Under the pieces are notes generated by a model, which saw only the letters and a program-made list of their open reading frames with translations, had not been told where the DNA came from and ran no database searches. A program made the position numbers and the translations under genes. A stretch of 63,230 nucleotides of DNA, filler included, from Octopus bimaculoides (lineage: Eukaryota), in NCBI RefSeq assembly GCF_001194135.2. It is 4 parts of 3 records of this genome, joined end to end, with 100 filler letters (N's around TTAATTAATTAA, not from the genome) between each part and the next. Parts side by side here need not be neighbours in the genome. Positions count along the whole stretch, not along the records: positions 1 to 28,845 come from NC_069004.1; 3 more parts are not named here. The stretch is one strand, 5' to 3'. This document shows, one piece after another, positions 183-23,138 of the stretch (positions are counted from its first letter, which is position 1; each line of letters starts with the position of its first letter).

Positions 183-217
<35 letters not shown>

Positions 218-408
218 GCAGGAGTCGCTGTGTGGTAAGTAGCTTGCTTACCAACCTCATGGTTCTGGGTTCAGTCCTACTGCGTGGCACCTTGGGCAAG
301 CGTCTTCTACTATAGCCTCGGGCCGTCTAAAACCTTGTGAGCGGATGTGGTAGGCAGAAACTGAAAGAAACCCGTCGTATATGTATCTGCGTATATGTAT
401 ATGTATAT
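218..408 (+). mobile_element. tRNA-derived SINE family A, head and central part
   Basis: GCAGGAGTCGCTGTGTGGTAAGTAGCTTGC with A-box/B-box-like motifs (GGGTTCAGTCC) and ACCTTGGGCAAG; near-identical copies at 4344, 13540 (-) and 49784. Confidence 0.8.
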
Positions 409-659
409 GCTGACACTTTTGCCTGAGTACATCCTTACATCGTTCCGGGGTCGATTACTTATCGACCCCCGGAACAATGTAAGGAAAAGTTGAACACTAC
501 AAGATTTGAATTGAGAATGCAGTGAGTTCGAAAATACCTCGCTAATTTGCCAAAATGCATGTCATGAGGCATATAAAATGAACAAATGCATGACATTGGT
601 CTGCTATTAATAATATCAATAATATATTACCATATTTAAGATATTTAATACTGATTTCA

Positions 660-3400: not shown

Positions 3401-4343
3401 GAGACAATGAAGGACTGAGGAATGAAGAGAGAAAATCAATTCCTGTTTAGGATTGTGTTGTTGTTTATTTTATGTTGAGGATTATGCTTGTGTCATTGGC
3501 AAAGAGCATTAAGAAATATATGGAATCCACCCTATTTTAGACTCAACAATGCTTTTAGGCTTTTATTATTTGAACAAAGTACTTACTTTTCATCAACATT
3601 TATATTATATGACAGGATATTGACTTCGTAATTTGAGAAATTTTACTGATAATGAAATTTAAGCCGTGCTTGTGAAAATAACCTTAGCCAGAAGGAGATG
3701 CATAAATACTAGAAATTACATGAGTATGAATACATAGAAATTTAAAGAAGGCGGGGAAAAATATCACAGTTTTTCGACACACGGATTTTCAAGTTATATA
3801 ACATTTTAGAAAAAAAAAATAACAAAAAAAAAATTTACTGATTTGAACGAAATCCAAATACTAACAAACAGTTGAGCATCCGTATCTCATATTATAAAGC
3901 AGTAGATATAAGCTTGTCCATGGGGGAATTACGTATTAAATGGATATCGTCACGGAATTTATCCGTTCGTATCAATTGTACAAATGTGGACGTATTTATT
4001 TTATTCAATGCAGTTACAGAATACAAACGCCCAACTGGAACAATATTGCACTGTCACAGAGTAAGTTTGTTTTATTCTTGAATATCGTAACTCAAATTCA
4101 GTATTATATACACTATATATATATATATATATATATATAGTTGCGCATCCTATACATCAATACATATACACTCTCATGCACACTGACTATACAGCAATAC
4201 ATAATTTTCGATGTTAAATTTTACACACACACACACACACACATACTCATACACACACTCATACACACACTCATGCATACATGCTTACATATATACATAC
4301 ATACACATATATATGTATAAATGTATATATATACACATATTAC

Positions 4344-4686
4344 GCAGGAGTGGCTTTGTGATAAGTAGCTTTCTTACCAACCACATGGTCCCGGGTTCAG
4401 TCCCACTCCGTGGCACCTTGGGCGAGTGTCTTCTTACTATAGCCTTGGGCCGACCAAAGCCTTGTGAGTGGATTTGGTAGACGGAAACTGGAAGAAGCCC
4501 GTCGTATATGTATATGTATGTATATGTCTGTGTATGTATATGTTTGTGTGTGTGTTTGTCCCCCCCCCAACATCGCTTGACAACCAATGCTGGTGTGTTT
4601 ACGTCCCCATAACTTAGCGATTCGGCAAAAGAGACAGATAGAATAAGTACTAGGCTTACAAAGAATAAGCTCTGGGGTCGATTTGC
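4344..4686 (+). mobile_element. SINE family A (head, internal TA/TG repeat, tail running into a gap)
   Basis: GCAGGAGTGGCTTTGTG...ACCTTGGGCGAGTG...CAACATCGCTTGACAACC...GGGGTCGATTTGC. Confidence 0.85.
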
Positions 4687-5584
4687 NNNNNNNNNNNNNN
4701 NNNNNNNNNNNNNNNNNNNNNNNNNNNNNNNNNNNNNNNNNNNNNNNNNNNNNNNNNNNNNNNNNNNNNNNNNNNNNNNNNNNNNNNNNNNNNNNNNNNN
4801 NNNNNNNNNNNNNNNNNNNNNNNNNNNNNNNNNNNNNNNNNNNNNNNNNNNNNNNNNNNNNNNNNNNNNNNNNNNNNNNNNNNNNNNNNNNNNNNNNNNN
4901 NNNNNNNNNNNNNNNNNNNNNNNNNNNNNNNNNNNNNNNNNNNNNNNNNNNNNNNNNNNNNNNNNNNNNNNNNNNNNNNNNNNNNNNNNNNNNNNNNNNN
5001 NNNNNNNNNNNNNNNNNNNNNNNNNNNNNNNNNNNNNNNNNNNNNNNNNNNNNNNNNNNNNNNNNNNNNNNNNNNNNNNNNNNNNNNNNNNNNNNNNNNN
5101 NNNNNNNNNNNNNNNNNNNNNNNNNNNNNNNNNNNNNNNNNNNNNNNNNNNNNNNNNNNNNNNNNNNNNNNNNNNNNNNNNNNNNNNNNNNNNNNNNNNN
5201 NNNNNNNNNNNNNNNNNNNNNNNNNNNNNNNNNNNNNNNNNNNNNNNNNNNNNNNNNNNNNNNNNNNNNNNNNNNNNNNNNNNNNNNNNNNNNNNNNNNN
5301 NNNNNNNNNNNNNNNNNNNNNNNNNNNNNNNNNNNNNNNNNNNNNNNNNNNNNNNNNNNNNNNCTAGTAATATCCGACAAGATGAGATTCATCATCGAAC
5401 TGGTAATATTTTCTTTATATAATTTTTAAAATCACTTTTATTAAATTACTTCTTAAATTGAAACGTCTCAGACTTACTTCTAAGGTATTACCATCTCCAT
5501 CATGTATTTATATATATATATATATATATAGTTATAAGAAGTGCTTAAGCACACACACGCATAGCACACACATATTTCCAATAA

Positions 5585-6522: not shown

Positions 6523-7362
6523 ATGTCTAAGTGTACCAGCTGGATTAAGCGCTGTTCTTCATGTCGATGGAGACTATGTTATGCCTGTGCTGGTGTTAGT
6601 CTTCTGATGCAAACATTAACAGTTGATCTGAGCATGGCTTTTGTTTGTATGTTGAAAACAACCAATCGTACAATTGAGGAAGTTAACTCTACAGCAAACA
6701 ACCAAGATTGTCCTGGTCTGGATAATTATTATTCAATAAACCCAAGTTTTGAAGGCGAATTCGAATGGGGTGACACGTTACAATCACACATGTTGGCTGG
6801 TTTCTTCTATGGATATATAGGAACTAACATTCTGGGTGGGATATTGGCAGACAAATATGGTGGGAAAAGAATTGTCGGAACGTCAGTACTTGCAGCATCA
6901 ATTTTGGCCATTCTTCACCCAAGTTTATCACGAGTTAGTGGCTACTTTACTCTTGTCCTAAGGATATTAACAGGTATGGCATCAGGATCAATATACCCGG
7001 CAATTCAGTCCTTATTTGGACGCTGGTGCCCTCCACAAGAAATTGGTTCGTTGGTTGCAATAACATTTGCTGCTCAATACCTAGGTAGTATTTTATGTCT
7101 CTCAATATCAGGTTATCTTTGTGTTTATGGATTTGATAATGGGTGGGGCCCTATATTTTACATATTTGGTGGATTATCGTTGGTGTTTAGTTTTGTGTGG
7201 TTTTATGTAGTTTACGATAATCCAGACACCCATCCCACTATCAGCGAAGAAGAATATTCTTACTTAAATAGAACTATAGTGAGTGGAAAAGTAGTTAAAA
7301 AAGTACCCTGGAAACGGCTGCTCTCTTCAAAATTCGGCAGCACACCTGAATTTCAAATATAA
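6523..7362 (+). pseudogene. SLC17A5-like: truncated intronless SLC17/sialin-like transporter (N-terminal half only)
   Basis: MFS motifs GGILADKYGGKR, FDNGWGPIFYIFG, YDNPDTHPTISEEE. Homology to the paralogs stops after VPWKRLLSS (~7329), then 10 unrelated codons and TAA. The C-terminal half is not seen (gap 7507-8072). ATG 6523 aligns with the paralog starts; the ORF-track GTG at 6490 does not. Confidence 0.8.
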
Positions 7363-7464: not shown

Positions 7465-8177
7465 GTCTTTTTTACATTTTCATAGTTTTTCAATCTTAAA
7501 ACTATCNNNNNNNNNNNNNNNNNNNNNNNNNNNNNNNNNNNNNNNNNNNNNNNNNNNNNNNNNNNNNNNNNNNNNNNNNNNNNNNNNNNNNNNNNNNNNN
7601 NNNNNNNNNNNNNNNNNNNNNNNNNNNNNNNNNNNNNNNNNNNNNNNNNNNNNNNNNNNNNNNNNNNNNNNNNNNNNNNNNNNNNNNNNNNNNNNNNNNN
7701 NNNNNNNNNNNNNNNNNNNNNNNNNNNNNNNNNNNNNNNNNNNNNNNNNNNNNNNNNNNNNNNNNNNNNNNNNNNNNNNNNNNNNNNNNNNNNNNNNNNN
7801 NNNNNNNNNNNNNNNNNNNNNNNNNNNNNNNNNNNNNNNNNNNNNNNNNNNNNNNNNNNNNNNNNNNNNNNNNNNNNNNNNNNNNNNNNNNNNNNNNNNN
7901 NNNNNNNNNNNNNNNNNNNNNNNNNNNNNNNNNNNNNNNNNNNNNNNNNNNNNNNNNNNNNNNNNNNNNNNNNNNNNNNNNNNNNNNNNNNNNNNNNNNN
8001 NNNNNNNNNNNNNNNNNNNNNNNNNNNNNNNNNNNNNNNNNNNNNNNNNNNNNNNNNNNNNNNNNNNNNNNNATCAATGTTTATTTTGATAACATTTTTG
8101 TTTAACTTTCATTAATAAAACGATGAGACATTGTGCACTTTCGTGTTATATATACATACATTTATAAAACGATTTTG

Positions 8178-11301: not shown

Positions 11302-12762
11302 ATGTCGAGGTTTATCAGATGGTTTAAGCATTACACTTCATGTCGATGGAAATTATGTTACGCTTGTACTGTTTCTTTTCTTCTCATGCAAACATTAAGA
11401 GTTGATCTAAGTATGGCTTTTGTTTGTATGTTGAAACCACTCAATCGTACAACTGAGGAAGTTAACATTACTGCAAACAACCAAGAGTGTTCTGCTGCTT
11501 TAGACAATCATTCTATGAATCAAAACTATGAAGGAGAGTTCGAATGGAGCGATACTCTACAATCGAATATGTTGGCAGGGTACTTCTATGGATATATAGC
11601 AACTAATATTTTAGGTGGTGTATTGGCAGATAAATATGGTGGGAAAAGAGTTCTTGGAGGTTCACTTCTTTTAGCATCAATTTTGACCATCCTTCACCCA
11701 AGTTTATCTCGAATTAGTGGTTACTTTACACTTTTTCTAAGGATATTAACTGGTATGGCATCGTCAGCGGTGGCCCCATCAATTCAGTCCTTATTTGGAC
11801 GTTGGGGCCCTCCAAACGAAATTAGTTCTTTGATTGGGTTTTCATTTGCTGGTCAATTTATAGGTAGTATTGTAGGTCTATCAATATCTGGTTTTCTTTG
11901 TGTGTATGGATTTGATAATGGATGGGGTTCTATATTTTATATATTTGGTGGAATATCGTTGGTATTTAGCTGTGTATGGTTTTACATTGTTTATGATAAT
12001 CCAGACGTCCATCCCACTATCAGCGAAGAAGAACGTTCTTACTTAAATAGGACTATAGTAAGTGAAAACGTAGTCAAGAATTTGCCTTGGCGACGACTGA
12101 TTTTTTCACCTGCCGTATGGGCTATTAATTTTGGTATGTTTTCTTATGGCTGGACCGATATATCTTTCCAAGTATTGCTCCCTCTATATATGAAAAAAGC
12201 CTTAAACGTTAATACAACAGCGAACGGTTTATTGTCGTCTGTTCCTTCCATTGGACAAATCATTGCTCTACCGTTGTGTGGAAAATGTGCAGATTTTATA
12301 CGTTCGAAGAAATATCTGTCAACTCGTTCCGTACGAGTTTTATTCCAAACATTTTCTATGGTGGCTTCAGCATGTCTGCTGATTGCCATAGGATTCCTTA
12401 GATGTGACCAAACCATTCTAATAACACTACTTTTGTTTCTCAGTGGTATAACTATATCATTTACCAGTGGTGGTGCCCTCATCAATAACAATGACATTGC
12501 TCCAAGTTATGCTGGTATTGTATTTGGATTTGCTAACACGTTCACATCAATAGCCGGCTGCATTAGCACCGTATCTACTAACGCTCTTACACCAAACGGC
12601 ACACAAAAAGAATGGCAGATCACGTTCGCCTTGTACGCTGCTATTTGTGTATTTGGTGCAATATTTTTTGCAATATTGGCAAAAGGAGAGATCCAATATT
12701 GGACAGCTTCAGAAGTACCTGGCTCATCTGTGCATCCTAGCAATAGGAGTACAAAAGGATGA
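11302..12762 (+). CDS. SLC17A5-like: SLC17 family (sialin-like) MFS anion transporter, intronless, 486 aa
   Basis: Uninterrupted ORF with about 12 hydrophobic segments; TM1 LRVDLSMA, GGVLADKYGGKR, GWGSIFYIFG, LLPLYM, DIAPSYAG..FG.ANTF, W...F; NRT/NIT sequons in loop 1. Family call is firm; orthology to SLC17A5 is not established. Confidence 0.93.
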   Translation: MSRFIRWFKHYTSCRWKLCYACTVSFLLMQTLRVDLSMAFVCMLKPLNRTTEEVNITANNQECSAALDNHSMNQNYEGEFEWSDTLQSNMLAGYFYGYIATNILGGVLADKYGGKRVLGGSLLLASILTILHPSLSRISGYFTLFLRILTGMASSAVAPSIQSLFGRWGPPNEISSLIGFSFAGQFIGSIVGLSISGFLCVYGFDNGWGSIFYIFGGISLVFSCVWFYIVYDNPDVHPTISEEERSYLNRTIVSENVVKNLPWRRLIFSPAVWAINFGMFSYGWTDISFQVLLPLYMKKALNVNTTANGLLSSVPSIGQIIALPLCGKCADFIRSKKYLSTRSVRVLFQTFSMVASACLLIAIGFLRCDQTILITLLLFLSGITISFTSGGALINNNDIAPSYAGIVFGFANTFTSIAGCISTVSTNALTPNGTQKEWQITFALYAAICVFGAIFFAILAKGEIQYWTASEVPGSSVHPSNRSTKG

Positions 12763-12911
12763 GGTGAGTAAATTCCTTGATCGTTTTGTCTAGCTAAAAC
12801 ACCAAGATCATTCAGTAGTACATAACTGTATGCTTTATTTTTGCCTGCCTGCATTCCTGTCTGTGTCTGTGTCTGTGTCTGTGTCTCTCTGTCTCTGTCT
12901 CTGTCTCTGTC

Positions 12912-12948
<37 letters not shown>

Positions 12949-13539
12949 ATATATATGAAGAAAAAAGCTGTCATTGTTAGTAAGTCGTAAAGTTGTGTTG
13001 CACTTATAGAATGATGCAATATGCGCAAATCAATCAGGAAAAAAGATTTATGTGTGGAGGTATCTGATTGTCTCTATACTTACCCCTTCTTTGTAATATT
13101 CACTTGAATATAATGATCGGATTGCTTGATATGCAGTGACAATTGTGATCAATGGTAGCTGGGGCTGCGACAGAAATTGAATGACTTGCATCGTTTAGTA
13201 GCTCTCATCTTCATTTCAATCCACTTCTGCTGACGTAACGTCAAAAAATTCAACATTCAGGAGTAAAGACCAAACATCTTTCACATTTCCCCACAAACTC
13301 TATTCACCTCGATTTATTAACGTGTTTTGCATTGATATAAAACCCGGATATATATATATATGTGTGTGTGTGCGCGTGTGTGTATAGAAATTAAATAACA
13401 AGATAGATTTGGTATTAAACCTTATCCTGTACCACGTTCGTTTCGACCGGTCCTACTATCTCAACACAAACACAACCAATCGACTTATTTTAGTCCAAAA
13501 CATTAATCACACAGACACACAAACACACACACACACATA

Positions 13540-13713
13540 TATATACATATATACGACGGGCTTCTTTCAGTTTCCGTCTACCAAATCCACTCACAAGGCT
13601 TTGGTCGGCCCGAGGCTATAGTAGAAGACACTTGCCCAAGGTGCCACGGAGTGGGACTGAACCCGGAACCATGTGGTTGGTAAGCAAGCTACTTATCACA
13701 CAGCCACTCCTGC
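13540..13713 (-). mobile_element. SINE family A head
   Basis: Almost exact reverse complement of 4344-4510. Confidence 0.85.
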
Positions 13714-14341
13714 GCCTATAGACTCTGTTCCATTAAAGTGTTTACATTTTATGTAAAACCACAAAACATTCATAGTAAGCGTGTCTACTTTCCTGCATAC
13801 ATGCATATAAATTAATTACGTATAAATTCTATAAAAGCTCAGATGACACGTACTTAATTTTAATTCATGCTCTGGCATACCTCTTTATGCACTGGCCATG
13901 CTCTTTATTGGTACCAGAAATTTGATCTCAAATGTAATGTCATTAACTTGTGATCTGAAATGTTTTGCACTTACACTCAGTGCATATTGCACAATAAAGG
14001 TGACAGCGTGCTATTAGTCAACGTTGCTGTTTCGCGGGCAATGGGAAGCCGGATGTATTTTGTTATATATATATTTTGGGATGAAACCGCCCCAAATTCT
14101 CGACGTCACCTTGGGAGATGCAGAGTGGTTGGTACGGGACGGCCAGCGATGGAGAGCAGTGGTGGACCTGGTCGGCTCTACGCATGATGACGCCCCTGGG
14201 ACCACTAAAATGGGATGATCCCAACCACATCAAGCAAAATCATGAAACAAAGCCAGTCACTTCTTAAATTACCACAATTTATTCGGATTTGTTGTTATTT
14301 GTTGTTGGGTCATTTTTCTTTCTGCTGAGGGTGGAATCAAC

Positions 14342-14560
14342 ATTTTCTGTGTTTATTTTTGTTTCTCGGAAATTAATCAATTTTTCCGCGCGTGCCTTTT
14401 GTACCGCGTTACGAATTTTCGTGTTTATTTTTGTTTATCAGAAATTCATCAATTTTTCGGCGCGTGCCTTTTGTACCGCGTTACGAATTTTCTTGTTTAT
14501 TTTTGTTTCTCAGAAATTCATCAAATTTTCCGCGTGTGCCTTTTGTACCGCGTTACGAAT
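14342..14560. repeat. 72-bp minisatellite, 3 copies
   Basis: GTACCGCGTTACGAATTTTC recurs at 14401, 14473 and 14545 (period 72). Confidence 0.9.
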
Positions 14561-14619
14561 TTTCTTTATTTTTTCTGTTGTGCAAATACTTGACTGAGAT
14601 ATGTGTTTTATTTTTCAGG

Positions 14620-15480
14620 TTACGTCTACTAATTCAAGCCCGTCTTGCTACTACCAAATAAAAGAAAGTGACTTCCTGAAATATGTCTAAAGGAATCAAA
14701 CCGACCCCCATCCCTCACAAAAGTCCAGAAATGTCTTTTTACACTTACAAAAATATCAAGAACGATTTTCTTATTTTGGTAACTATTCCGTGCACAGAAA
14801 TAATCATAACATTGGAAAATTCACAGACTGTAATCCAGAATATGAACACATAAAACCCCCCCCACTTCTTTCAGAAAAAAAAACGACAAAAAATATCAAG
14901 AACTACAAGAACAATAATGGTGATAAAATGCCTTCTTTTATTCTTGTCATTTGGATTTTTTAAAAGCAAACATTGAAAACATTTGACATAGACATTGTGT
15001 TGGAAAGTAGAACAAAAAGGATTTATACTGTTTCTAGTGTAGTGAAAAAAAAAATGGTAATTTTTGGGACAGAGGATAATCGGTACCATCAAATTTATAA
15101 CTAGTTGGGTACTTTATTTTATCGCTCCCGAAAGGAAGAAAGGCAAATTCGAACTCAGAACATAAAATGTCGGAGAAAAGTTCACAAATAATTTTTATCG
15201 ACGCTTTAATGATTCTGCATTCCTCTCCTCGTTTTCATATGACATCGTTTTGGCTATCTCTCAAATTGTGAGGTCAGTTTCAATTTACAATTACAATACA
15301 TTTCGGAAAGCAGAGAACTATTCCGAACATGTTATACTATAAATAACTGAACATGAAGAAAATATATGAACCACGCACACACTAAATCGATAATTATATA
15401 AAAACAAAAGAATTAAAAGCAATCGTTTCAAATATGTACTAAACAAATTGGGAAACCTACATACACACACACACACACGC
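14620..15480. repeat. duplicated 3' flank block, copy 1 (downstream of the minus-strand gene at 16114)
   Basis: Colinear with 20260-21020: CTGAAATA.GTCTAAAGGAAT, TTCCGTGC, GCACAGAAATAATCA, TTGGAAAAT.CACA.ACTGTAAT.CAGAATA, GGTACTTTATTT.ATCG...CCGAAAGGAAG. Confidence 0.75.
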
Positions 15481-15689
15481 GCGCGTGGGTGGTAACATCA
15501 TAGGGAAGTTGGGCGTAAATGTTGTAAAGTCATTTTTAAACAAAATAAATATAAACAAAAAACCGATAAAGCATATTTATTTTATCGAACGAACGCAGTA
15601 AAATCAATTCTCAACTCTTTTAGAGACGGTCGTTCATTACAAACAAAAACAACTAAACATCAACAGCAATAATGGTTTCATTTTTTGGC

Positions 15690-15880
15690 ACAGCGCTTAT
15701 TTTATCGATCCTCATAATTGGATGAAAGGCAAAACCAACCTGGATAGAATTTGAACTCAGAAAGTGAAGACGGATGGAAACTGCTAAGCATTTTGCCCGT
15801 CGTGCTAACGGTTCTGCCAGCACGCTGCCTTAATAATAATAATGGTTTCAAATTTTGCCTCAAGGACAGCAATTCTGGGT
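15690..15880 (-). mobile_element. SINE family B
   Basis: TTTGAACTCAGAA...CTAAGCATTTTGCCCGTCGTGCTAACGGTTCTGCCAGC is the reverse complement of the 23583 head. Confidence 0.75.
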
Positions 15881-16113
15881 TAGAAAGTAAATAAGAAACA
15901 TCTTCTAAGTTCATATCGATTATATGTGAAAGTAAAGTTTTGATTAAATGGCAAGATTTCAAAAGAATTTTTAAAATGTCCTTGCTAGTGTTTTATATTT
16001 TAATTTTTCTAATATACTCACCTATACCGTGGAATTTCTACGGATCCCGCTAGTTTTCAAAAGATTAGTAAAATTACAGAAGATATTAATATATACATTC
16101 ATGTGTGCTATTG

Positions 16114-17577
16114 CTAAGGTATTAAGTTAACATTCACTGTTTTTGAATTTTCAGGCGAATCAGTTCCCTCTATACGTGCCCAATCTTGGATTTCTCCTCT
16201 GGCCAATATCGCAAACAATATTGCACCAACTACACATACAGAAGCAAACAAGGCTAACACGATCTGCCATTCTTCTTGTGTACCATTTGGAGTGAGAGCT
16301 TTTGCAGACACCGTACTAATACTGCCAGCTGCTGTGCCAAAAGCATTAGCTATTCCAAATACAACGCCAGCGTAATTTGGGGCAATGTCAATGTTGTTGA
16401 CGGTAACACCACCGCTGGAAAAGGATAGAGTTATACCACTAAGAAACAAGAGGATACTTATTAAAGTGTTTTCGCCACATTCGAGGAATCCTATCGCGAT
16501 TAACAGACTTGCTGAACCTAACATAGAAAAAGTGTGGAATAAAACTCGAACAGAACGAGTTGACAGATATTTCTTTGAACGTACAATATCTGCGCATTTT
16601 CCCCACACCGGTAAAGCAATTATTTGTCCAACTGCAGTGACAGACGACATTAAACCGTTGGATGTTGTATTAACGTTTAAAGCTTCTTTCACATAAAGAG
16701 GTAACAACACCTGGAAAGATAGAGTAGTCCAACAATAAGCACACCAACCAAAGATGATGGCCCAAACTGCAGATGAAGAGAACAGCCGTTTCCAGGGCAC
16801 ATTTTTAACTACTTTTTCACTCACTATAGTTCTCTTTAAGTAAGAATATTCTTCTTCGCTGATAGTGGGATGGGTGTCTGGATTATCGTAAACTACATAA
16901 AACCACACACAACTAAACACCAACGATAATCCACCAAATATATAAAATATAGAACCCCATCCATTATCAAATCCATACACACAAAGGTAACCTGATATCG
17001 AAAGACATAAAATACTACCTAAATATTGAGCAGCAAATATAATAGCAATCAATAAACTAATTTCTTGTGAAGGAGCCCAGCGTCCAAATAAGGACTGAAG
17101 TGCAGGGTAGGTCGGCCCCGATACCACACCGGTTAATATCCTTAGAACAAGAGTAAAGTAGCCACTAACTCGTGATAAACTTGGGTGGAGAATGGTCAAA
17201 ATTGATGATGAGAGAAATGAAGCTCCCAGAACTCTTTTTCCACCATATTTATCTGCCAATAATCCACCCACAATGTTAGTCCCTATATATCCATAAAAGT
17301 AACCAGCTAACATGTTTGATTGTAATTTATCACTCCATTCAAACTCTCCTTCATAATTTCGATTTAATGAATAATTATTCAAAGCAGAACAACGATGTTC
17401 ATTTGCAGTAAAGCTAACTTCCTCAGTCGTACGATTGGGTGTTTTCAACATACATACAAATGCCATGCTTAGATTAACTCTTAATGTTTGCATCAAAAGA
17501 CTAGCAGTAGCACAGGCATAACATAGTCTCCAACGACAAGAAGAATAACGCTTTATCCAGAGGGCGAATTGAGACAT
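16114..17577 (-). CDS. SLC17A5-like: SLC17 family (sialin-like) MFS anion transporter, intronless, ~487 aa
   Basis: Uninterrupted ORF; TM1 LRVNLSMA, GGLLADKYGGKR, DIAPNYAGVVFGIANAFG, EEWQIV. ATG 17577 aligns with the paralog starts (the ORF track starts at TTG 17592). Confidence 0.93.
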   Translation of the reverse strand: MSQFALWIKRYSSCRWRLCYACATASLLMQTLRVNLSMAFVCMLKTPNRTTEEVSFTANEHRCSALNNYSLNRNYEGEFEWSDKLQSNMLAGYFYGYIGTNIVGGLLADKYGGKRVLGASFLSSSILTILHPSLSRVSGYFTLVLRILTGVVSGPTYPALQSLFGRWAPSQEISLLIAIIFAAQYLGSILCLSISGYLCVYGFDNGWGSIFYIFGGLSLVFSCVWFYVVYDNPDTHPTISEEEYSYLKRTIVSEKVVKNVPWKRLFSSSAVWAIIFGWCAYCWTTLSFQVLLPLYVKEALNVNTTSNGLMSSVTAVGQIIALPVWGKCADIVRSKKYLSTRSVRVLFHTFSMLGSASLLIAIGFLECGENTLISILLFLSGITLSFSSGGVTVNNIDIAPNYAGVVFGIANAFGTAAGSISTVSAKALTPNGTQEEWQIVLALFASVCVVGAILFAILARGEIQDWARIEGTDSPENSKTVNVNLIP

Positions 17578-18139
17578 TTTTGTTAACTTCAAGTTCCAAT
17601 GATTTTCACAATGTTTATTTTTAAGAGATGTGTGATGTAATTTTTAAATATTGAATGAAACAGTAAAAGACAGTCACCAAAAATTAGCAACTTCTTACTT
17701 TCCTGTGCGCAGCTTCATTTCATAAAATTAATGATGGTTGTTTGGTCTCTAAAGTGTATATTTAACCAAATGAAATCTGATGTTCAAACATTTTGATTAA
17801 GATATCTTAATGTCAATATATTTCAGAGTAGCTTGGTACATTTCATTATCGATAAATTTAGACATGTAACCCTGTAAAGCTTAGTGTTAATATATATTAG
17901 TTATCACTGCTTTAGTAAACTATTTTGTTTATTTTTTACTATCACGTTAAGGCAAAAATACAATCAAGAAATAAGACGAATAAAAATGCAGAGTTTGACA
18001 GTAAATTATAGAGAACGCAAATTCAGGAATTGTGTTACAATCTGTAAAGTTTGGCTCTGGAATTAATACCGTCACTTCCAAATCTTCTCTGTCTGCTGTA
18101 AATCTGAAACCTGGAGATACATAAGAAACAGTCGAAAAA

Positions 18140-21020: not shown

Positions 21021-21486
21021 GGTGGGAACCTGCCAGATCGTTTGGATCGGAATATTCCACAAATTTAGTCTCCATGACGCTATAAAACAGTTACGTATGT
21101 TTATATGTTACCTTATGTTACCGTATCTGTTCATCGATGTATATAACTACACACGCTAACATGAATTAGCATTCGCATATTCGCACGCACAAAAGTTACA
21201 GTGTTAACATTGCCCTGGCGCATACCAAATATATTATACATAGAGACGCCATTACAAATGAATACAGAAAATGTATAGATACATCCAAAGCCATACAGAC
21301 ACGCACGTATATACCACTCCCAATAATGCATAATATAAAAATTCTTAATCTCAGAAATATAGGAACCCCACGTACGAGGGGATCGCGAAAAGTCCCTGCC
21401 TTTAAGTGTATAGCGAGAGGCTTGGCTGTAGGCCTAAACTTCCGCTGCGATACTTATGATATATATATATCACAAGTATCGCAGTA

Positions 21487-21522
<36 letters not shown>

Positions 21523-21595
21523 TGTATGTATGTATGTATGTATGTATGTATGTGTGTGTGTGTGTGTGTGTGTGNNNNNNNNNNNNNNNNNNNNN

Positions 21596-21650
<55 letters not shown>

Positions 21651-21685: not shown

Positions 21686-23138
21686 CTAAGCAATTTTATT
21701 TGTTTGTGTGTCGCTATGATTAACGGAAGATCCAGGCTCTTCTGAACTTGCCCAATCTTGTATTTCTCCTCTGGCTAATATTGAATACAAGATTGCTCCA
21801 GATACACATATGGCAGCCAACAATGCAAACACAATCTGCCATTCTTCTTTAGTGCCGTTTGGTGTTAAGGCCTTCGTAGATAAGGGACAAATGCTGCTGG
21901 CTATTGTTCCGAAACTGTTTGCAATTCCATATACAGTACCCGCATATTTCGGAGCAATGTCTTTGTTATTCACGTGAACACCACCGCAAACAAATGACAT
22001 TGTTACACCACAGAGAAATAAGAGAAAACTTATTAGAATGGTTTGGTCACATCTGAGGAAAGTTATGGCAATTAATATGCATCCAGAAAAAATCAGAGAA
22101 AAGTCTTGGAATAAAACTCGAACACAACGAGTTGACAGAAATTTCTTGGAAAGTACGAAATCTGCCAGATTCCCACATAACGGTAGAGCAATAACTTATC
22201 CAACTGAATGGGCAGACGACATTAAACCGTTGGACGTTGTTTTAACGTTTAAGGCTTCGTTCATATATAGAGGAAGCAATACTTGTAACGATGTTTGCAT
22301 CCACTTAGAACTTAGCGAAGTTAATTGCCCAAACTGCAGGTGAAGAAAATAATTTTTTCCATGGTACATTCTTAACTGCCTTTTTGCTTGTTACGGTTGT
22401 ATTTAGATAAGAACGTTCTTCATCGCTGATAGTCGGGTGGGTGTCCGGATTATCATAAACCACATAAAACCATACACAGCTAAACAACAACGATAATCCA
22501 CCAAATACATAGAATATGGAACCCCATCCATTATCAAAGCCATAAACAGAAAGAAAACCTGATACTGAATGGCCTACGAATGTACCTAAGAATTGACCAG
22601 CAAATGAAAACCCAATCAATGAACTAATTTCCTATGTAGGTCCCCAACGTCTAAATAGGGAATGAATTGCTGGGTATATAGGTCCAGATACCATACCTGT
22701 TAAAATTCTAAGAACAAGCGTAATGTAACCACTAATTCGGGATAAACTTGGGTGAAGAACAGACAGAAGAGAGGCTAAGATTAGTGAACCCGCCACAACT
22801 CTTTTCCCACCGTATTTATCAGCCAATAAACCACCCAGAATATTAGACATAATATATCCATAAAAGTACCCGGCCAACATGTTCGATTGTAACGTGGCAC
22901 TCCATTCGAATTCTCCTTCAAAATTTTGGTTCCTTGAATAATTATCTGCACCGGAACAATGTTCGTTGTTTACAGAAATGTTAACTTCCTCACTTGTACG
23001 ATTGGGAGTTTTCGACATACAAACAAATGCCATACTTAGATCAACTTTGAATGTTTGTATCAGTATACAAACAATAAAACAGGCATAGCACAATCTCCAG
23101 GAACAACAACGCTTTGTATACTGGATAAACTTCGACAT
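21686..23138 (-). pseudogene. SLC17A5-like: SLC17/sialin-like pseudogene, full length but disrupted
   Basis: Colinear with the paralogs. In-frame TAG at 22634-22632, a ~5-nt deletion frameshift near 22300-22307 (TTC TAA G TGG vs TTT TCT TAT GGC TGG), and in-frame TAA at 22198-22196. Confidence 0.88.

What the first reader, a model, noticed from the sequence alone, without database searches (positions are those of the whole stretch)
11302..17577. All paralogs lack the TM4 glutamates used for proton coupling in sialin
Seen: TM4 reads LRILTGMASSAVAPSIQ (11302 gene), LRILTGVVSGPTYPALQ (16114 gene), LRILTGMASGSIYPAIQ and LRILTGMVSGPIYPAIH. Known (recalled human sialin LRALEGLGEGVTFPAMH): R168 is kept, but E171 becomes T, E175 (VGLUT2 E191 equivalent) becomes S, and H183 becomes Q in three copies; the PPLERS Arg becomes Ile. 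TM7 keeps the sialin-type Tyr rather than the VGLUT Arg. Inference: these are not classic H+/sialic-acid symporters or VGLUTs. They may be voltage-driven or differently coupled anion carriers with an unknown substrate. This is my best candidate for novel biology here.
Basis: partly seen in the sequence, partly recalled or inferred. Interest (0 to 1): 0.72.

Follow-up and report, generated by a model that had tools for sequence, protein, structure and literature searches.

The report
Octopus sialin-like transporters without TM4 glutamates
Part of the known octopus "sialin" gene expansion: two working and two broken intronless SLC17 transporter genes that lack the usual proton-coupling glutamates, a loss shared with an old, widespread and uncharacterised invertebrate subfamily.

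Summary
All four SLC17 copies in the piece read LRILTG..S... in TM4. Pairwise and multiple alignments give R168 kept, E171→T, E175→S, H183→Q (His in copy D), R195→Ile, and the sialin-type Tyr301 where VGLUT2 has Arg322.

- **Only two copies are genes.** B (11302-12762, +) and C (17577-16114, -) are intact. Against their O. vulgaris orthologues dN/dS is 0.17 and 0.20. A is a 269-codon fragment. D has two stops and a frameshift.
- **The locus is known.** It lies on Octopus bimaculoides chromosome CM046624.1, in the published octopod "sialin" expansion. The genes are annotated "slc-17.2-like".
- **The Glu loss is old.** It is shared with a multi-exon single-copy cephalopod gene and with a subfamily in bivalves, gastropods, chitons, nemerteans and annelids. 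Nematode, rotifer and insect relatives also lack the Glu.
- **These are not lysosomal sialic-acid/H+ symporters.** The dileucine sorting motif is absent and Neu5Ac-pocket residues are replaced or hypervariable.
- **New here:** cephalopods later gained Asp59 (TM1) and His153 (TM3) along the proton tunnel. Most paralogs, including B, also gained Asp305 (TM7). C has neither Asp.

Whether transport is uncoupled or re-coupled is untested. Interest is moderate.

The parts
11302..12762 (+). Gene B: intact, single-exon SLC17 (sialin-like MFS) gene of 486 aa
   Evidence: ORF and translation. Pfam MFS_1, E=3.8e-43. Human sialin E=1.6e-92. AF2 model pLDDT 87.7, with TM-score 0.94 (normalised to target) to sialin 8u3f. 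O. vulgaris orthologue is intact, dN/dS 0.172. Annotated protein in NCBI and UniRef.
16114..17577 (-). Gene C: intact, single-exon SLC17 gene of 487 aa from the ATG at 17577. The mechanical ORF starts at a TTG at 17592. C is convergent (tail-to-tail) with B.
   Evidence: O. vulgaris orthologue is intact, dN/dS 0.201. 94% identical to O. sinensis XP_036355395.1.
6523..7329 (+). Copy A: 5' fragment covering only residues 1-269. The frame ends at 7362 after unrelated codons. An N gap lies at 7507-8072. TM1 Arg57 is replaced by Thr.
   Evidence: tblastn of B covers query residues 1-269 only, and no C-terminal half is found anywhere in the piece. R57→T. No orthologue within 10 kb upstream of B in O. 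vulgaris.
21698..23138 (-). Copy D: pseudogene. Two in-frame stops (RWGPT*EISS and SVG*VIAL) and a frameshift near 22308-22315.
   Evidence: tblastn splits it into frame -2 (23138-22308) and frame -3 (22315-21698). The translations show the stops.
11737..11787 (+). TM4 motif of B, LRILTGMASSAVAPSIQ. R147 = sialin R168 (11740-11742), T150 = E171 (11749-11751), S154 = E175 (11761-11763), Q162 = H183 (11785-11787).
17095..17145 (-). TM4 motif of C, LRILTGVVSGPTYPALQ. R146 = R168 (17140-17142), T149 = E171 (17131-17133), S153 = E175 (17119-17121), Q161 = H183 (17095-17097).
11404..11406 (+). Asp35 of B (= sialin N59, TM1). A buried carboxylate two residues after the substrate Arg. C has Asn here (17473-17475).
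   Evidence: N59, T153 and R168 line the luminal tunnel in human sialin (PMC9858498).
11695..11697 (+). His132 of B (= sialin T153, TM3). His in all four window copies (C: 17185-17187).
12157..12159 (+). Asp286 of B (= sialin F305, mid-TM7, a substrate-pocket position). C has Thr here.

Best explanation
**What it is.** The window is a slice of the tandem, octopod-specific expansion of intronless SLC17 ('sialin-like', NCBI 'slc-17.2-like') major-facilitator genes. It lies on Octopus bimaculoides chromosome CM046624.1. B and C are working genes under purifying selection. A is a truncated copy and D is a pseudogene.

**How it works, shown and inferred.**
- The proteins have the 12-helix SLC17 fold and keep the two cavity arginines, R57 in TM1 and R168 in TM4 (shown).
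- Those arginines bind the anionic group in sialin, VGLUT and DgoT. I therefore read the octopus proteins as rocker-switch carriers of anionic or carboxylate-bearing solutes (inferred).
- They cannot use the sialin TM4 proton relay, because E171 and E175 are Thr and Ser (shown).
- This state was inherited. An old lophotrochozoan SLC17 subfamily has a non-acidic residue at 171 and Thr or Ser at 175. That subfamily also lacks the lysosomal dileucine motif (shown).
- Loss of the motif points to non-lysosomal membranes, where a steep pH gradient is not available (inferred).
- In cephalopods the already Glu-less background then gained Asp59 (TM1) and His153 (TM3) along the luminal tunnel next to R168 (shown).
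- Most expansion paralogs, including B, also gained Asp or Glu at 305 in TM7, in the pocket that holds R57. B therefore again has two buried Arg and two buried acids, at new positions (shown).

**My commitment (inferred).**
- B-type paralogs are pH-sensitive or H+-coupled through a DgoT-like TM1-Asp / TM4-Arg latch.
- C-type paralogs have no buried acid and act as uncoupled, electrogenic anion carriers.
- Substrates are not sialic acid and differ between paralogs, because the C-domain pocket is the most variable part of the protein.
For: **Identity and locus**
- Best hits are Octopus and Argonauta 'slc-17.2-like' or 'sialin' proteins.
- Record CM046624.1 holds four called MFS genes within 21 kb.

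**Fold**
- Pfam MFS_1.
- AF2 pLDDT 87.7, pTM 0.88.
- Foldseek TM-score, normalised to target: sialin 0.94, VGLUT2 0.89, DgoT 0.83-0.86.

**Function retained**
- B and C orthologues are intact in O. vulgaris. dN/dS is 0.172 and 0.201 at dS about 0.146.

**Origin**
- B and C are single-exon. The related single-copy cephalopod gene P0050 has at least 10 coding exons over about 20 kb.

**Phylogeny**
- The expansion plus the cephalopod single-copy genes form a clade with bootstrap 94.
- That clade sits inside a Glu-less molluscan group and apart from canonical sialins.

**Site states across 316 sequences**
- 19 of 23 expansion members have D59 and 17 of 23 have H153.
- 14 of 24 paralogs have both D59 and D/E305.
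- C and its orthologue have neither Asp.

**Pocket**
- Of 104 positions conserved in canonical sialins, only T178, R195, H298, N302, Y306 and T310 are hypervariable in the expansion.

**Sorting motif**
- Present in 60 of 127 Glu/Glu proteins against 7 of 138 E175-less proteins, Fisher p=3e-16.
- L22G/L23G sialin goes to the cell surface (PMC11116495).

**Role of the residues in characterised proteins**
- E171Q and E175Q each lose about 95% of Neu5Ac transport.
- The tunnel is lined by T153, N59 and R168 (PMC9858498).
- DgoT D46-R126 and E133-R47 act as protonation-controlled latches (PMC11649914).
Against: - No transport, localisation or expression data exist for any member of this clade, or for any Glu-less relative that I could find.
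- I could not measure distances in the model because no coordinates are returned. The D59-R168 and D305-R57 contacts are inferred from literature descriptions of the human structure.
- C is conserved as well as B yet has neither Asp. The new acids are therefore not essential to the clade.
- Absence of a dileucine motif does not prove a non-lysosomal location.
- The NJ tree has weak deep nodes (bootstrap 44-58). Whether the Glu-less lineages share one loss or several is open.
- A non-transport role, such as a receptor, transceptor or anion conductance, is not excluded.
Confidence: 0.65

Rival explanations
1. Simple loss of coupling. All these paralogs, B included, are proton-independent anion uniporters, exchangers or channel-like conductances driven only by membrane potential and substrate gradients. 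This is essentially the first reader's reading. On this view D59, H153 and D305 are substrate-site or structural changes with no role in protonation.
For: - Both TM4 glutamates are gone in every copy.
- C and its orthologue have no buried acid at all, yet evolve under dN/dS 0.20.
- The wider Glu-less subfamily has N59 and no His153.
- The lysosomal sorting motif is absent.
Against: - VGLUT2, a potential-driven SLC17 carrier (my knowledge), keeps the E175 equivalent E191. Loss of the Glu is therefore not the signature of voltage-driven transport.
- D59 is fixed in 19 of 23 and H153 in 17 of 23 expansion members, and both are present in the single-copy cephalopod orthologues. Both lie on the tunnel that leads to the proton site in human sialin.
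Confidence: 0.3
2. The copies are decaying duplicates. The missing glutamates would then be one symptom of relaxed constraint in redundant genes with no transport function left.
For: - A is truncated and has lost Arg57.
- D has two stops and a frameshift.
- Large tandem families usually contain many pseudogenes.
Against: - B and C are intact in two species, with dN/dS of 0.17 and 0.20.
- Thr171 is invariant and Ser175 nearly invariant across paralogs that differ at dS about 0.56.
- Both cavity Arg and most MFS signature residues are kept.
Confidence: 0.03
3. Alignment artefact. A Glu really occupies the E171 and E175 positions and the register in TM4 is shifted.
For: None found.
Against: - Two phmmer pairwise alignments and three MAFFT alignments agree, with no gaps across TM4.
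- The stretch is flanked by invariant R168, G172, P180 and W189.
- There is no Glu or Asp anywhere in residues 117-172 of B.
Confidence: 0.01

Closest known systems
Human sialin (SLC17A5), lysosomal H+/sialic-acid symporter (PDB 8dwi, 8u3d)
   Same: - Best structural and sequence match: 36% identity, TM-score 0.94, E=1e-92.
- 12-TM MFS fold.
- R57, Y119, R168, E194 and N430 are kept.
- Tyr301 is kept where VGLUT2 has Arg.
   Different: - E171→T, E175→S, H183→Q, R195→I and Y54→Q. H298, N302 and Y306 are replaced and variable.
- No N-terminal dileucine sorting motif. The N-terminus is 12-15 residues, against a median of 36 in Glu/Glu family members.
- Intronless.
- Not in the sialin clade.
E. 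coli DgoT, D-galactonate:2H+ symporter (PDB 6e9n, 6e9o)
   Same: - Same fold (TM-score 0.83-0.86) and the same two Arg.
- B has an Asp on TM1 close to the substrate Arg. DgoT likewise has D46 next to R47, latching R126 (= R168).
   Different: - About 18% identity.
- DgoT keeps E133 (= E175).
- The octopus Asp sits at +2 from the Arg, whereas DgoT D46 sits at -1.
- Whether the octopus Asp is protonated is untested.
VGLUT2 (SLC17A6), membrane-potential-driven, H+/Cl- regulated glutamate carrier (PDB 8sbe, 7t3o)
   Same: - About 30% identity, TM-score 0.89.
- Already lacks a Glu at the E171 position: it has Q187.
   Different: - VGLUT2 keeps E191 (= E175) and has R322 in TM7.
- The octopus proteins have Ser and Tyr at these positions. 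They have Leu at the position Hu et al. equate with VGLUT2 H128, sialin L112.
Uncharacterised invertebrate 'slc-17.2-like / sialin-like' subfamily (bivalves, gastropods, chiton, nemertean, annelid), plus the single-copy cephalopod 'sialin' XP models P0050 and P0043
   Same: - True closest relatives.
- Non-acidic residue 171 and Thr or Ser at 175.
- No dileucine motif.
- The cephalopod single-copy genes share D59, H153, T171 and S175 exactly.
   Different: - Those genes are multi-exon and keep the sialin-like pocket (Y54, H298, N302, Y306, R195).
- The octopod expansion is intronless and tandem, and its pocket is remodelled.
Insect SLC17 expansion (29 Drosophila members; MFS13 is a Na+-dependent phosphate carrier)
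   Same: - Another lineage-specific invertebrate SLC17 expansion (PMC3280997).
- Insect members in my alignment also lack both Glu (P0079 Q/G, P0082 M/Q).
   Different: - Independent expansion at about 25-30% identity.
- I did not check the residues of MFS13 itself.

Membership tests
SLC17 / anion:cation symporter family of the major facilitator superfamily | 12-TM MFS fold with significant sequence similarity to sialin, VGLUT and DgoT | tested here: met
   Pfam MFS_1, E about 1e-43. PDB phmmer: sialin 1e-92, VGLUT2 1e-70, DgoT 3e-10. Foldseek TM-score 0.83-0.94.
SLC17 / anion:cation symporter family of the major facilitator superfamily | Conserved cavity arginines in TM1 (R57; DgoT R47) and TM4 (R168; DgoT R126) | tested here: met
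   Both are Arg in B and C. R168 is invariant in all paralogs. A has Thr and D has Lys at position 57.
SLC17 / anion:cation symporter family of the major facilitator superfamily | Conserved TM4 glutamate (sialin E175 = VGLUT2 E191 = DgoT E133), described as conserved across the family (PMC11649914, PMC9858498) | tested here: not met
   Ser in all four window copies and in 21 of 23 octopod paralogs. This is a hallmark of the characterised members, not a criterion of homology.
Sialin (SLC17A5) orthologues: lysosomal H+/sialic-acid symporters | Proton-relay pair E171 + E175, with partners T146, T150 and T153 | tested here: not met
   The window copies have T171, S175, A or S at 146, and H153. All 97 canonical sequences have E, E, T, T and T/S at these positions.
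Sialin (SLC17A5) orthologues: lysosomal H+/sialic-acid symporters | Neu5Ac-pocket residues Y54, H298, N302 and Y306 (PMC9858498) | tested here: not met
   B has Q, M, G and I. C has Q, W, C and L. Positions 298, 302 and 306 are hypervariable among paralogs.
Sialin (SLC17A5) orthologues: lysosomal H+/sialic-acid symporters | N-terminal [DE]xxxLL lysosomal sorting motif (human L22/L23) | tested here: not met
   The N-termini are 14 residues with no such motif. The motif is present in canonical sialins from molluscs to vertebrates.
Sialin (SLC17A5) orthologues: lysosomal H+/sialic-acid symporters | Orthology by phylogeny | tested here: not met
   The octopod clade groups with Glu-less molluscan paralogs (bootstrap 94/77/58), not with the canonical sialin clade. 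This is an NJ tree only and the deep nodes are weak.
Sialin (SLC17A5) orthologues: lysosomal H+/sialic-acid symporters | H+-coupled sialic-acid transport activity | not testable with these tools
   Needs an uptake or electrophysiology assay.
Vesicular glutamate transporters (SLC17A6-8) | TM7 Arg (VGLUT2 R322), E191, and H128 (equated by Hu et al. with sialin L112) | tested here: not met
   Tyr aligns with R322 and Ser with E191. The L112 position is Leu.
Octopod 'sialin' gene expansion (Albertin et al. 2015, as cited in PMC6110919 and PMC6062618) | Octopus-lineage paralog clade arranged in tandem on one chromosome | tested here: met
   At least 16 O. bimaculoides models lie on the 36.17-Mb chromosome. 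Four called MFS genes lie within 21 kb. Clade bootstrap is 94. The primary paper was not available to read.

The most novel reading that the evidence does not exclude
Cephalopods have rebuilt the SLC17 proton-coupling network at new positions. An ancestral invertebrate lineage lost the TM4 glutamates. The cephalopod branch then acquired a TM1 Asp (D59) and a TM3 His (H153) on the luminal tunnel next to R168. This resembles the DgoT D46-R126 latch. Most members of the intronless octopod expansion added a TM7 Asp (D305) facing R57, while they diversified the C-domain pocket. If true, the family contains natural coupled (B-type) and uncoupled (C-type) neighbours. Some members, carrying both an Arg and an Asp in the pocket, might carry zwitterionic rather than purely anionic substrates.
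Probability: 0.3. Interest if true: 0.6.

Novelty: new variant of a known kind. Interest (0 to 1): 0.4.

Why it matters
- **A challenge to the mechanistic model.** Models of SLC17 carriers (sialin, VGLUTs, DgoT) centre on the TM4 glutamate equivalent to E175, E191 or E133. Recent structural papers call it conserved across the family. This survey shows a large, old and wholly uncharacterised set of invertebrate SLC17 proteins that lack it.
- **A natural experiment.** Octopuses have amplified one such lineage into dozens of intronless genes. B and C are adjacent, differ in their buried acids, and are both under purifying selection. That gives a ready-made comparison for asking what the glutamate is needed for.
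- **A gap in cephalopod biology.** The 'sialin' expansion is one of the few large octopus gene-family expansions that still has no proposed function. The data say it is not about lysosomal sialic-acid export.
- **Limits.** For this window itself the result is modest: known genes, a known expansion and an inherited trait.

Tried and rejected
- **Primary paper.** Albertin et al. 2015 could not be opened by PMC id or DOI. I relied on two reviews that cite it.
- **Orthologue DNA for C.** The exact-sequence look-up of O. sinensis P0015 found nothing on record. The O. vulgaris locus L001 held orthologues of both B and C, so I used that instead.
- **First tree attempt.** The Biopython distance and bootstrap run timed out. 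I replaced it with a numpy Kimura-distance NJ tree with 100 bootstraps. No maximum-likelihood tree was possible.
- **Functional literature.** A search for 'slc-17.2' returned only two transcriptome papers. Searching cephalopod + SLC17 + sialin gave nothing functional. The Drosophila HisT paper only lists SLC17 genes as negatives in a screen.
- **Other features.** Rfam found no RNA families in the piece. Tandem repeats are ordinary microsatellites plus one 72-bp array.
- **Rejected: B and C as pseudogenes**.
- **Rejected: misalignment of TM4**.
- **Rejected: 'loss of Glu is specific to this cluster'**.
- **Rejected: 'Y306 is the VGLUT Arg equivalent'.** The alignment shows it is Y301.
- **Not possible.** Residue-residue distances could not be measured because the structure tool returns no coordinates.

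Full report
**What is in the window**

The piece (1-28845) is AT-rich eukaryotic DNA with several N runs. tblastn with the 11302 gene product finds four SLC17 copies.

| Copy | Position | Strand | State |
|---|---|---|---|
| A | 6523-7329 | + | Residues 1-269 only, then unrelated codons, a stop at 7362 and an N gap at 7507-8072 |
| B | 11302-12762 | + | Intact, 486 aa |
| C | 17577-16114 | - | Intact, 487 aa |
| D | 23138-21698 | - | Two in-frame stops and a frameshift near 22308-22315 |

B and C are single uninterrupted ORFs arranged tail-to-tail.

The best database hits are Octopus and Argonauta proteins named 'uncharacterized transporter slc-17.2-like' or 'sialin'. The A fragment maps to Octopus bimaculoides assembly GCA_001194135.2, chromosome CM046624.1, at about 2.53 Mb. 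Four MFS genes are called there within 21 kb, and another paralog lies about 2 kb upstream of the window. B and C are already annotated proteins in NCBI and UniRef.

**Checking the observation**

- phmmer against PDB sequences aligns B (E=1.6e-92) and C (E=4.2e-87) to human sialin without gaps through TM4.
- The result is R168=Arg, E171=Thr, E175=Ser, H183=Gln, E194=Glu and R195=Ile.
- MAFFT alignments of 90, 209 and 316 relatives give the same register.
- The VGLUT2 alignment shows that VGLUT2 R322 corresponds to sialin Y301.
- An AlphaFold2 model of B (pLDDT 87.7, pTM 0.88) superposes on sialin (TM-score 0.94, normalised to target; rmsd 2.4 Å), VGLUT2 (0.89) and DgoT (0.83-0.86).

The caveat is that two of the four 'paralogs' are dead copies.

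**Are B and C real genes?**

The O. vulgaris locus L001 (OX597837.1) contains intact orthologues of both.

| Comparison | dN | dS | dN/dS |
|---|---|---|---|
| B, O. bimaculoides vs O. vulgaris | 0.025 | 0.145 | 0.172 |
| C, O. bimaculoides vs O. vulgaris | 0.030 | 0.147 | 0.201 |
| B vs C, paralogs | 0.167 | 0.563 | 0.30 |

Intergenic DNA between the species is 82-91% identical and coding DNA is 93-94% identical. Both genes are therefore under purifying selection.

**Where the Glu-less state comes from**

Thr171 is invariant and Ser175 is present in 21 of 23 full-length octopod and Argonauta paralogs. The state is not new to them.

- A single-copy cephalopod gene (P0050 in O. bimaculoides, P0043 in O. 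sinensis, P0205 in Argonauta) has T171 and S175. It keeps the sialin-like pocket and R195.
- Its nearest relatives form a large subfamily in bivalves, gastropods, a chiton, a nemertean and annelids. These have Leu, Val or Met at 171 and Thr or Ser at 175.
- Nematode slc-17.2-like proteins (Ile/Gln), rotifer (Ile/His), Haliotis paralogs and insect members (Met/Gln, Gln/Gly) also lack both Glu.
- An NJ tree (70 taxa, 478 columns, 100 bootstraps) groups the octopod expansion with the cephalopod single-copy genes (bootstrap 94). That group sits inside a Glu-less molluscan set (77, 58) and apart from canonical sialins. Deep nodes are weak.
- Canonical sialins were found from cnidarians to vertebrates and in gastropods, bivalves and a chiton. 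They keep Glu/Glu almost without exception.
- P0050 has at least 10 coding exons over about 20 kb. B and C have none. The expansion therefore most likely began with a retrocopy that was then duplicated in tandem (inference).

The octopus 'sialin' expansion is listed among the notable O. bimaculoides gene-family expansions of Albertin et al. 2015, as cited in PMC6110919 and PMC6062618. I could not read the primary paper.

**What the literature says the glutamates do**

- In human sialin, E171Q and E175Q each lose about 95% of Neu5Ac transport. A luminal tunnel lined by T153, N59 and R168 leads to E171. E175 pairs with R57 (PMC9858498).
- A second group found more than 60% loss in the double mutants (PMC11116495).
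- In DgoT, D46 (TM1) latches R126 (= R168) and E133 (= E175) latches R47 (= R57). Protonation releases both latches (PMC11649914).
- Those papers call the Glu 'conserved across the SLC17 family'. My alignments show that VGLUT2 has Gln at the E171 position. Bird NPT3-like proteins have Leu there. E175 is the one kept in all the characterised members that I aligned.

**What else changed**

I compared 22 expansion members with 136 Glu/Glu proteins.

- Ten positions are conserved in both groups but hold different residues: Y54Q, N59D, V62M, F115Y, Q123N, E171T, E175S, W240F, I266L and L309Q.
- Of 104 positions conserved in canonical sialins, only six are hypervariable in the expansion: T178, R195, H298, N302, Y306 and T310. 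Three of these are Neu5Ac-pocket residues. R195 is part of the cytosolic constriction.
- Asp59 (19 of 23) and His153 (17 of 23, and all four window copies) occur together only in cephalopods. They are absent from the other Glu-less lineages. They are therefore later gains on a Glu-less background.
- Position 305, in mid-TM7 and in the pocket, is Asp or Glu in 14 of 24 expansion paralogs. All 14 also carry D59.

Counting buried charges on the model helices gives this picture:

| Protein | Buried charged or titratable residues (sialin numbering) |
|---|---|
| B | R57, D59, H153, R168, D305 |
| C (and its orthologue) | R57, H153, R168 |

**Localisation signal**

- Canonical sialins from molluscs, echinoderms and vertebrates carry an N-terminal [DE]xxxLL motif such as ESSSLL, EREPLL or DRSPLL. 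Mutating L22/L23 sends human sialin to the cell surface.
- The motif is present in 60 of 127 Glu/Glu proteins and in 7 of 138 E175-less proteins, Fisher p=3e-16.
- Expansion members have N-termini of only 12-15 residues with no such motif.

**Interpretation**

Shown:
- These are functional SLC17-fold proteins that keep both substrate arginines.
- They lack the TM4 proton relay, the sialic-acid pocket and the lysosomal sorting motif.
- The loss is ancient.

Inferred:
- They carry anionic or carboxylate-bearing solutes other than sialic acid, at non-lysosomal membranes.
- Substrate preference differs between paralogs.

Most speculative:
- In B-type paralogs, D59 with H153 beside R168, and D305 near R57, restore two Arg-acid latches at new positions. 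These could give pH sensitivity or H+ coupling.
- C-type paralogs, with no buried acid, would be uncoupled electrogenic carriers.

'Voltage-driven' is one possibility and does not follow from the Glu loss, because VGLUT2 keeps that Glu. Decay is excluded for B and C, and misalignment is excluded.

**Verdict**

- The genes and the expansion are known, and the Glu-less state is inherited and widespread. As a finding about this window it is modest.
- Not described, as far as I could find: the whole Glu-less invertebrate subfamily is uncharacterised, and the cephalopod branch carries a distinctive replacement set (D59, H153, D305) with a diversified pocket.
- I rate it a new variant of a known kind, with interest 0.4.

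Noticed in passing
No window coordinates; protein searches: No cephalopod protein appears among the 120 best hits to a canonical molluscan Glu/Glu sialin (Lymnaea P0066). Gastropods, bivalves, a chiton, a brachiopod, annelids, echinoderms and cnidarians all do. Octopuses may lack a canonical sialin, and the T171/S175 single-copy gene (P0050/P0043) may stand in for it. Only the top 120 hits are listed, so absence is not proven.
   Followed up: partly
window 6523-7362 and 7507-8072: Copy A stops being homologous after residue 269, about 180 bp before an N gap. It has Thr in place of the substrate Arg57. It is closest to C (dS 0.36). No counterpart lies within 10 kb upstream of the B orthologue in O. 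vulgaris. It could be a partial duplicate or a gene broken by an insertion or an assembly gap.
   Followed up: partly
window 189-409, 4315-4686, 13508-13720 (inverted); L001 3464-3812, 12559-12923, 13329-13890: A dispersed repeat of about 200-370 bp occurs at least three times in the window and at least three times in the O. vulgaris locus, at 81-96% identity. It is probably a SINE- or MITE-like element. One copy abuts the N run at 4687.
   Followed up: no
window 14342-14566; L001 16372-16919: A 72-bp unit is repeated 3.1 times between B and C. The same unit matches many overlapping places across about 550 bp in O. vulgaris, so the array is longer there.
   Followed up: no
P0001 (O. bimaculoides 'sialin', 695 aa): This NCBI model reads as one full paralog fused to the C-terminal half of a second one. 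The sequence restarts at '...VPWKRLLLSLAVWAIN...'. It is probably an annotation merge of neighbouring tandem genes.
   Followed up: no
Alignments: [quoted passage not shown] Rat VGLUT2 has Gln187 at that position. Bird 'sodium-dependent phosphate transport protein 3-like' proteins (P0304, P0309) have Leu there and also Gln at the R168 position. E175 is kept in both.
   Followed up: partly
L002 16-1482 (about 2 kb upstream of window position 1): A further intact 488-aa paralog lies just outside the window on the + strand. Its TM4 reads LRILTGILSGPVPPAIH and it carries D59. The local array is therefore at least five copies long.
   Followed up: partly
window 21484-21648: (GTAT)n and (GA)n microsatellites flank a 21-bp N run immediately downstream of the 3' end of pseudogene D.
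   Followed up: no
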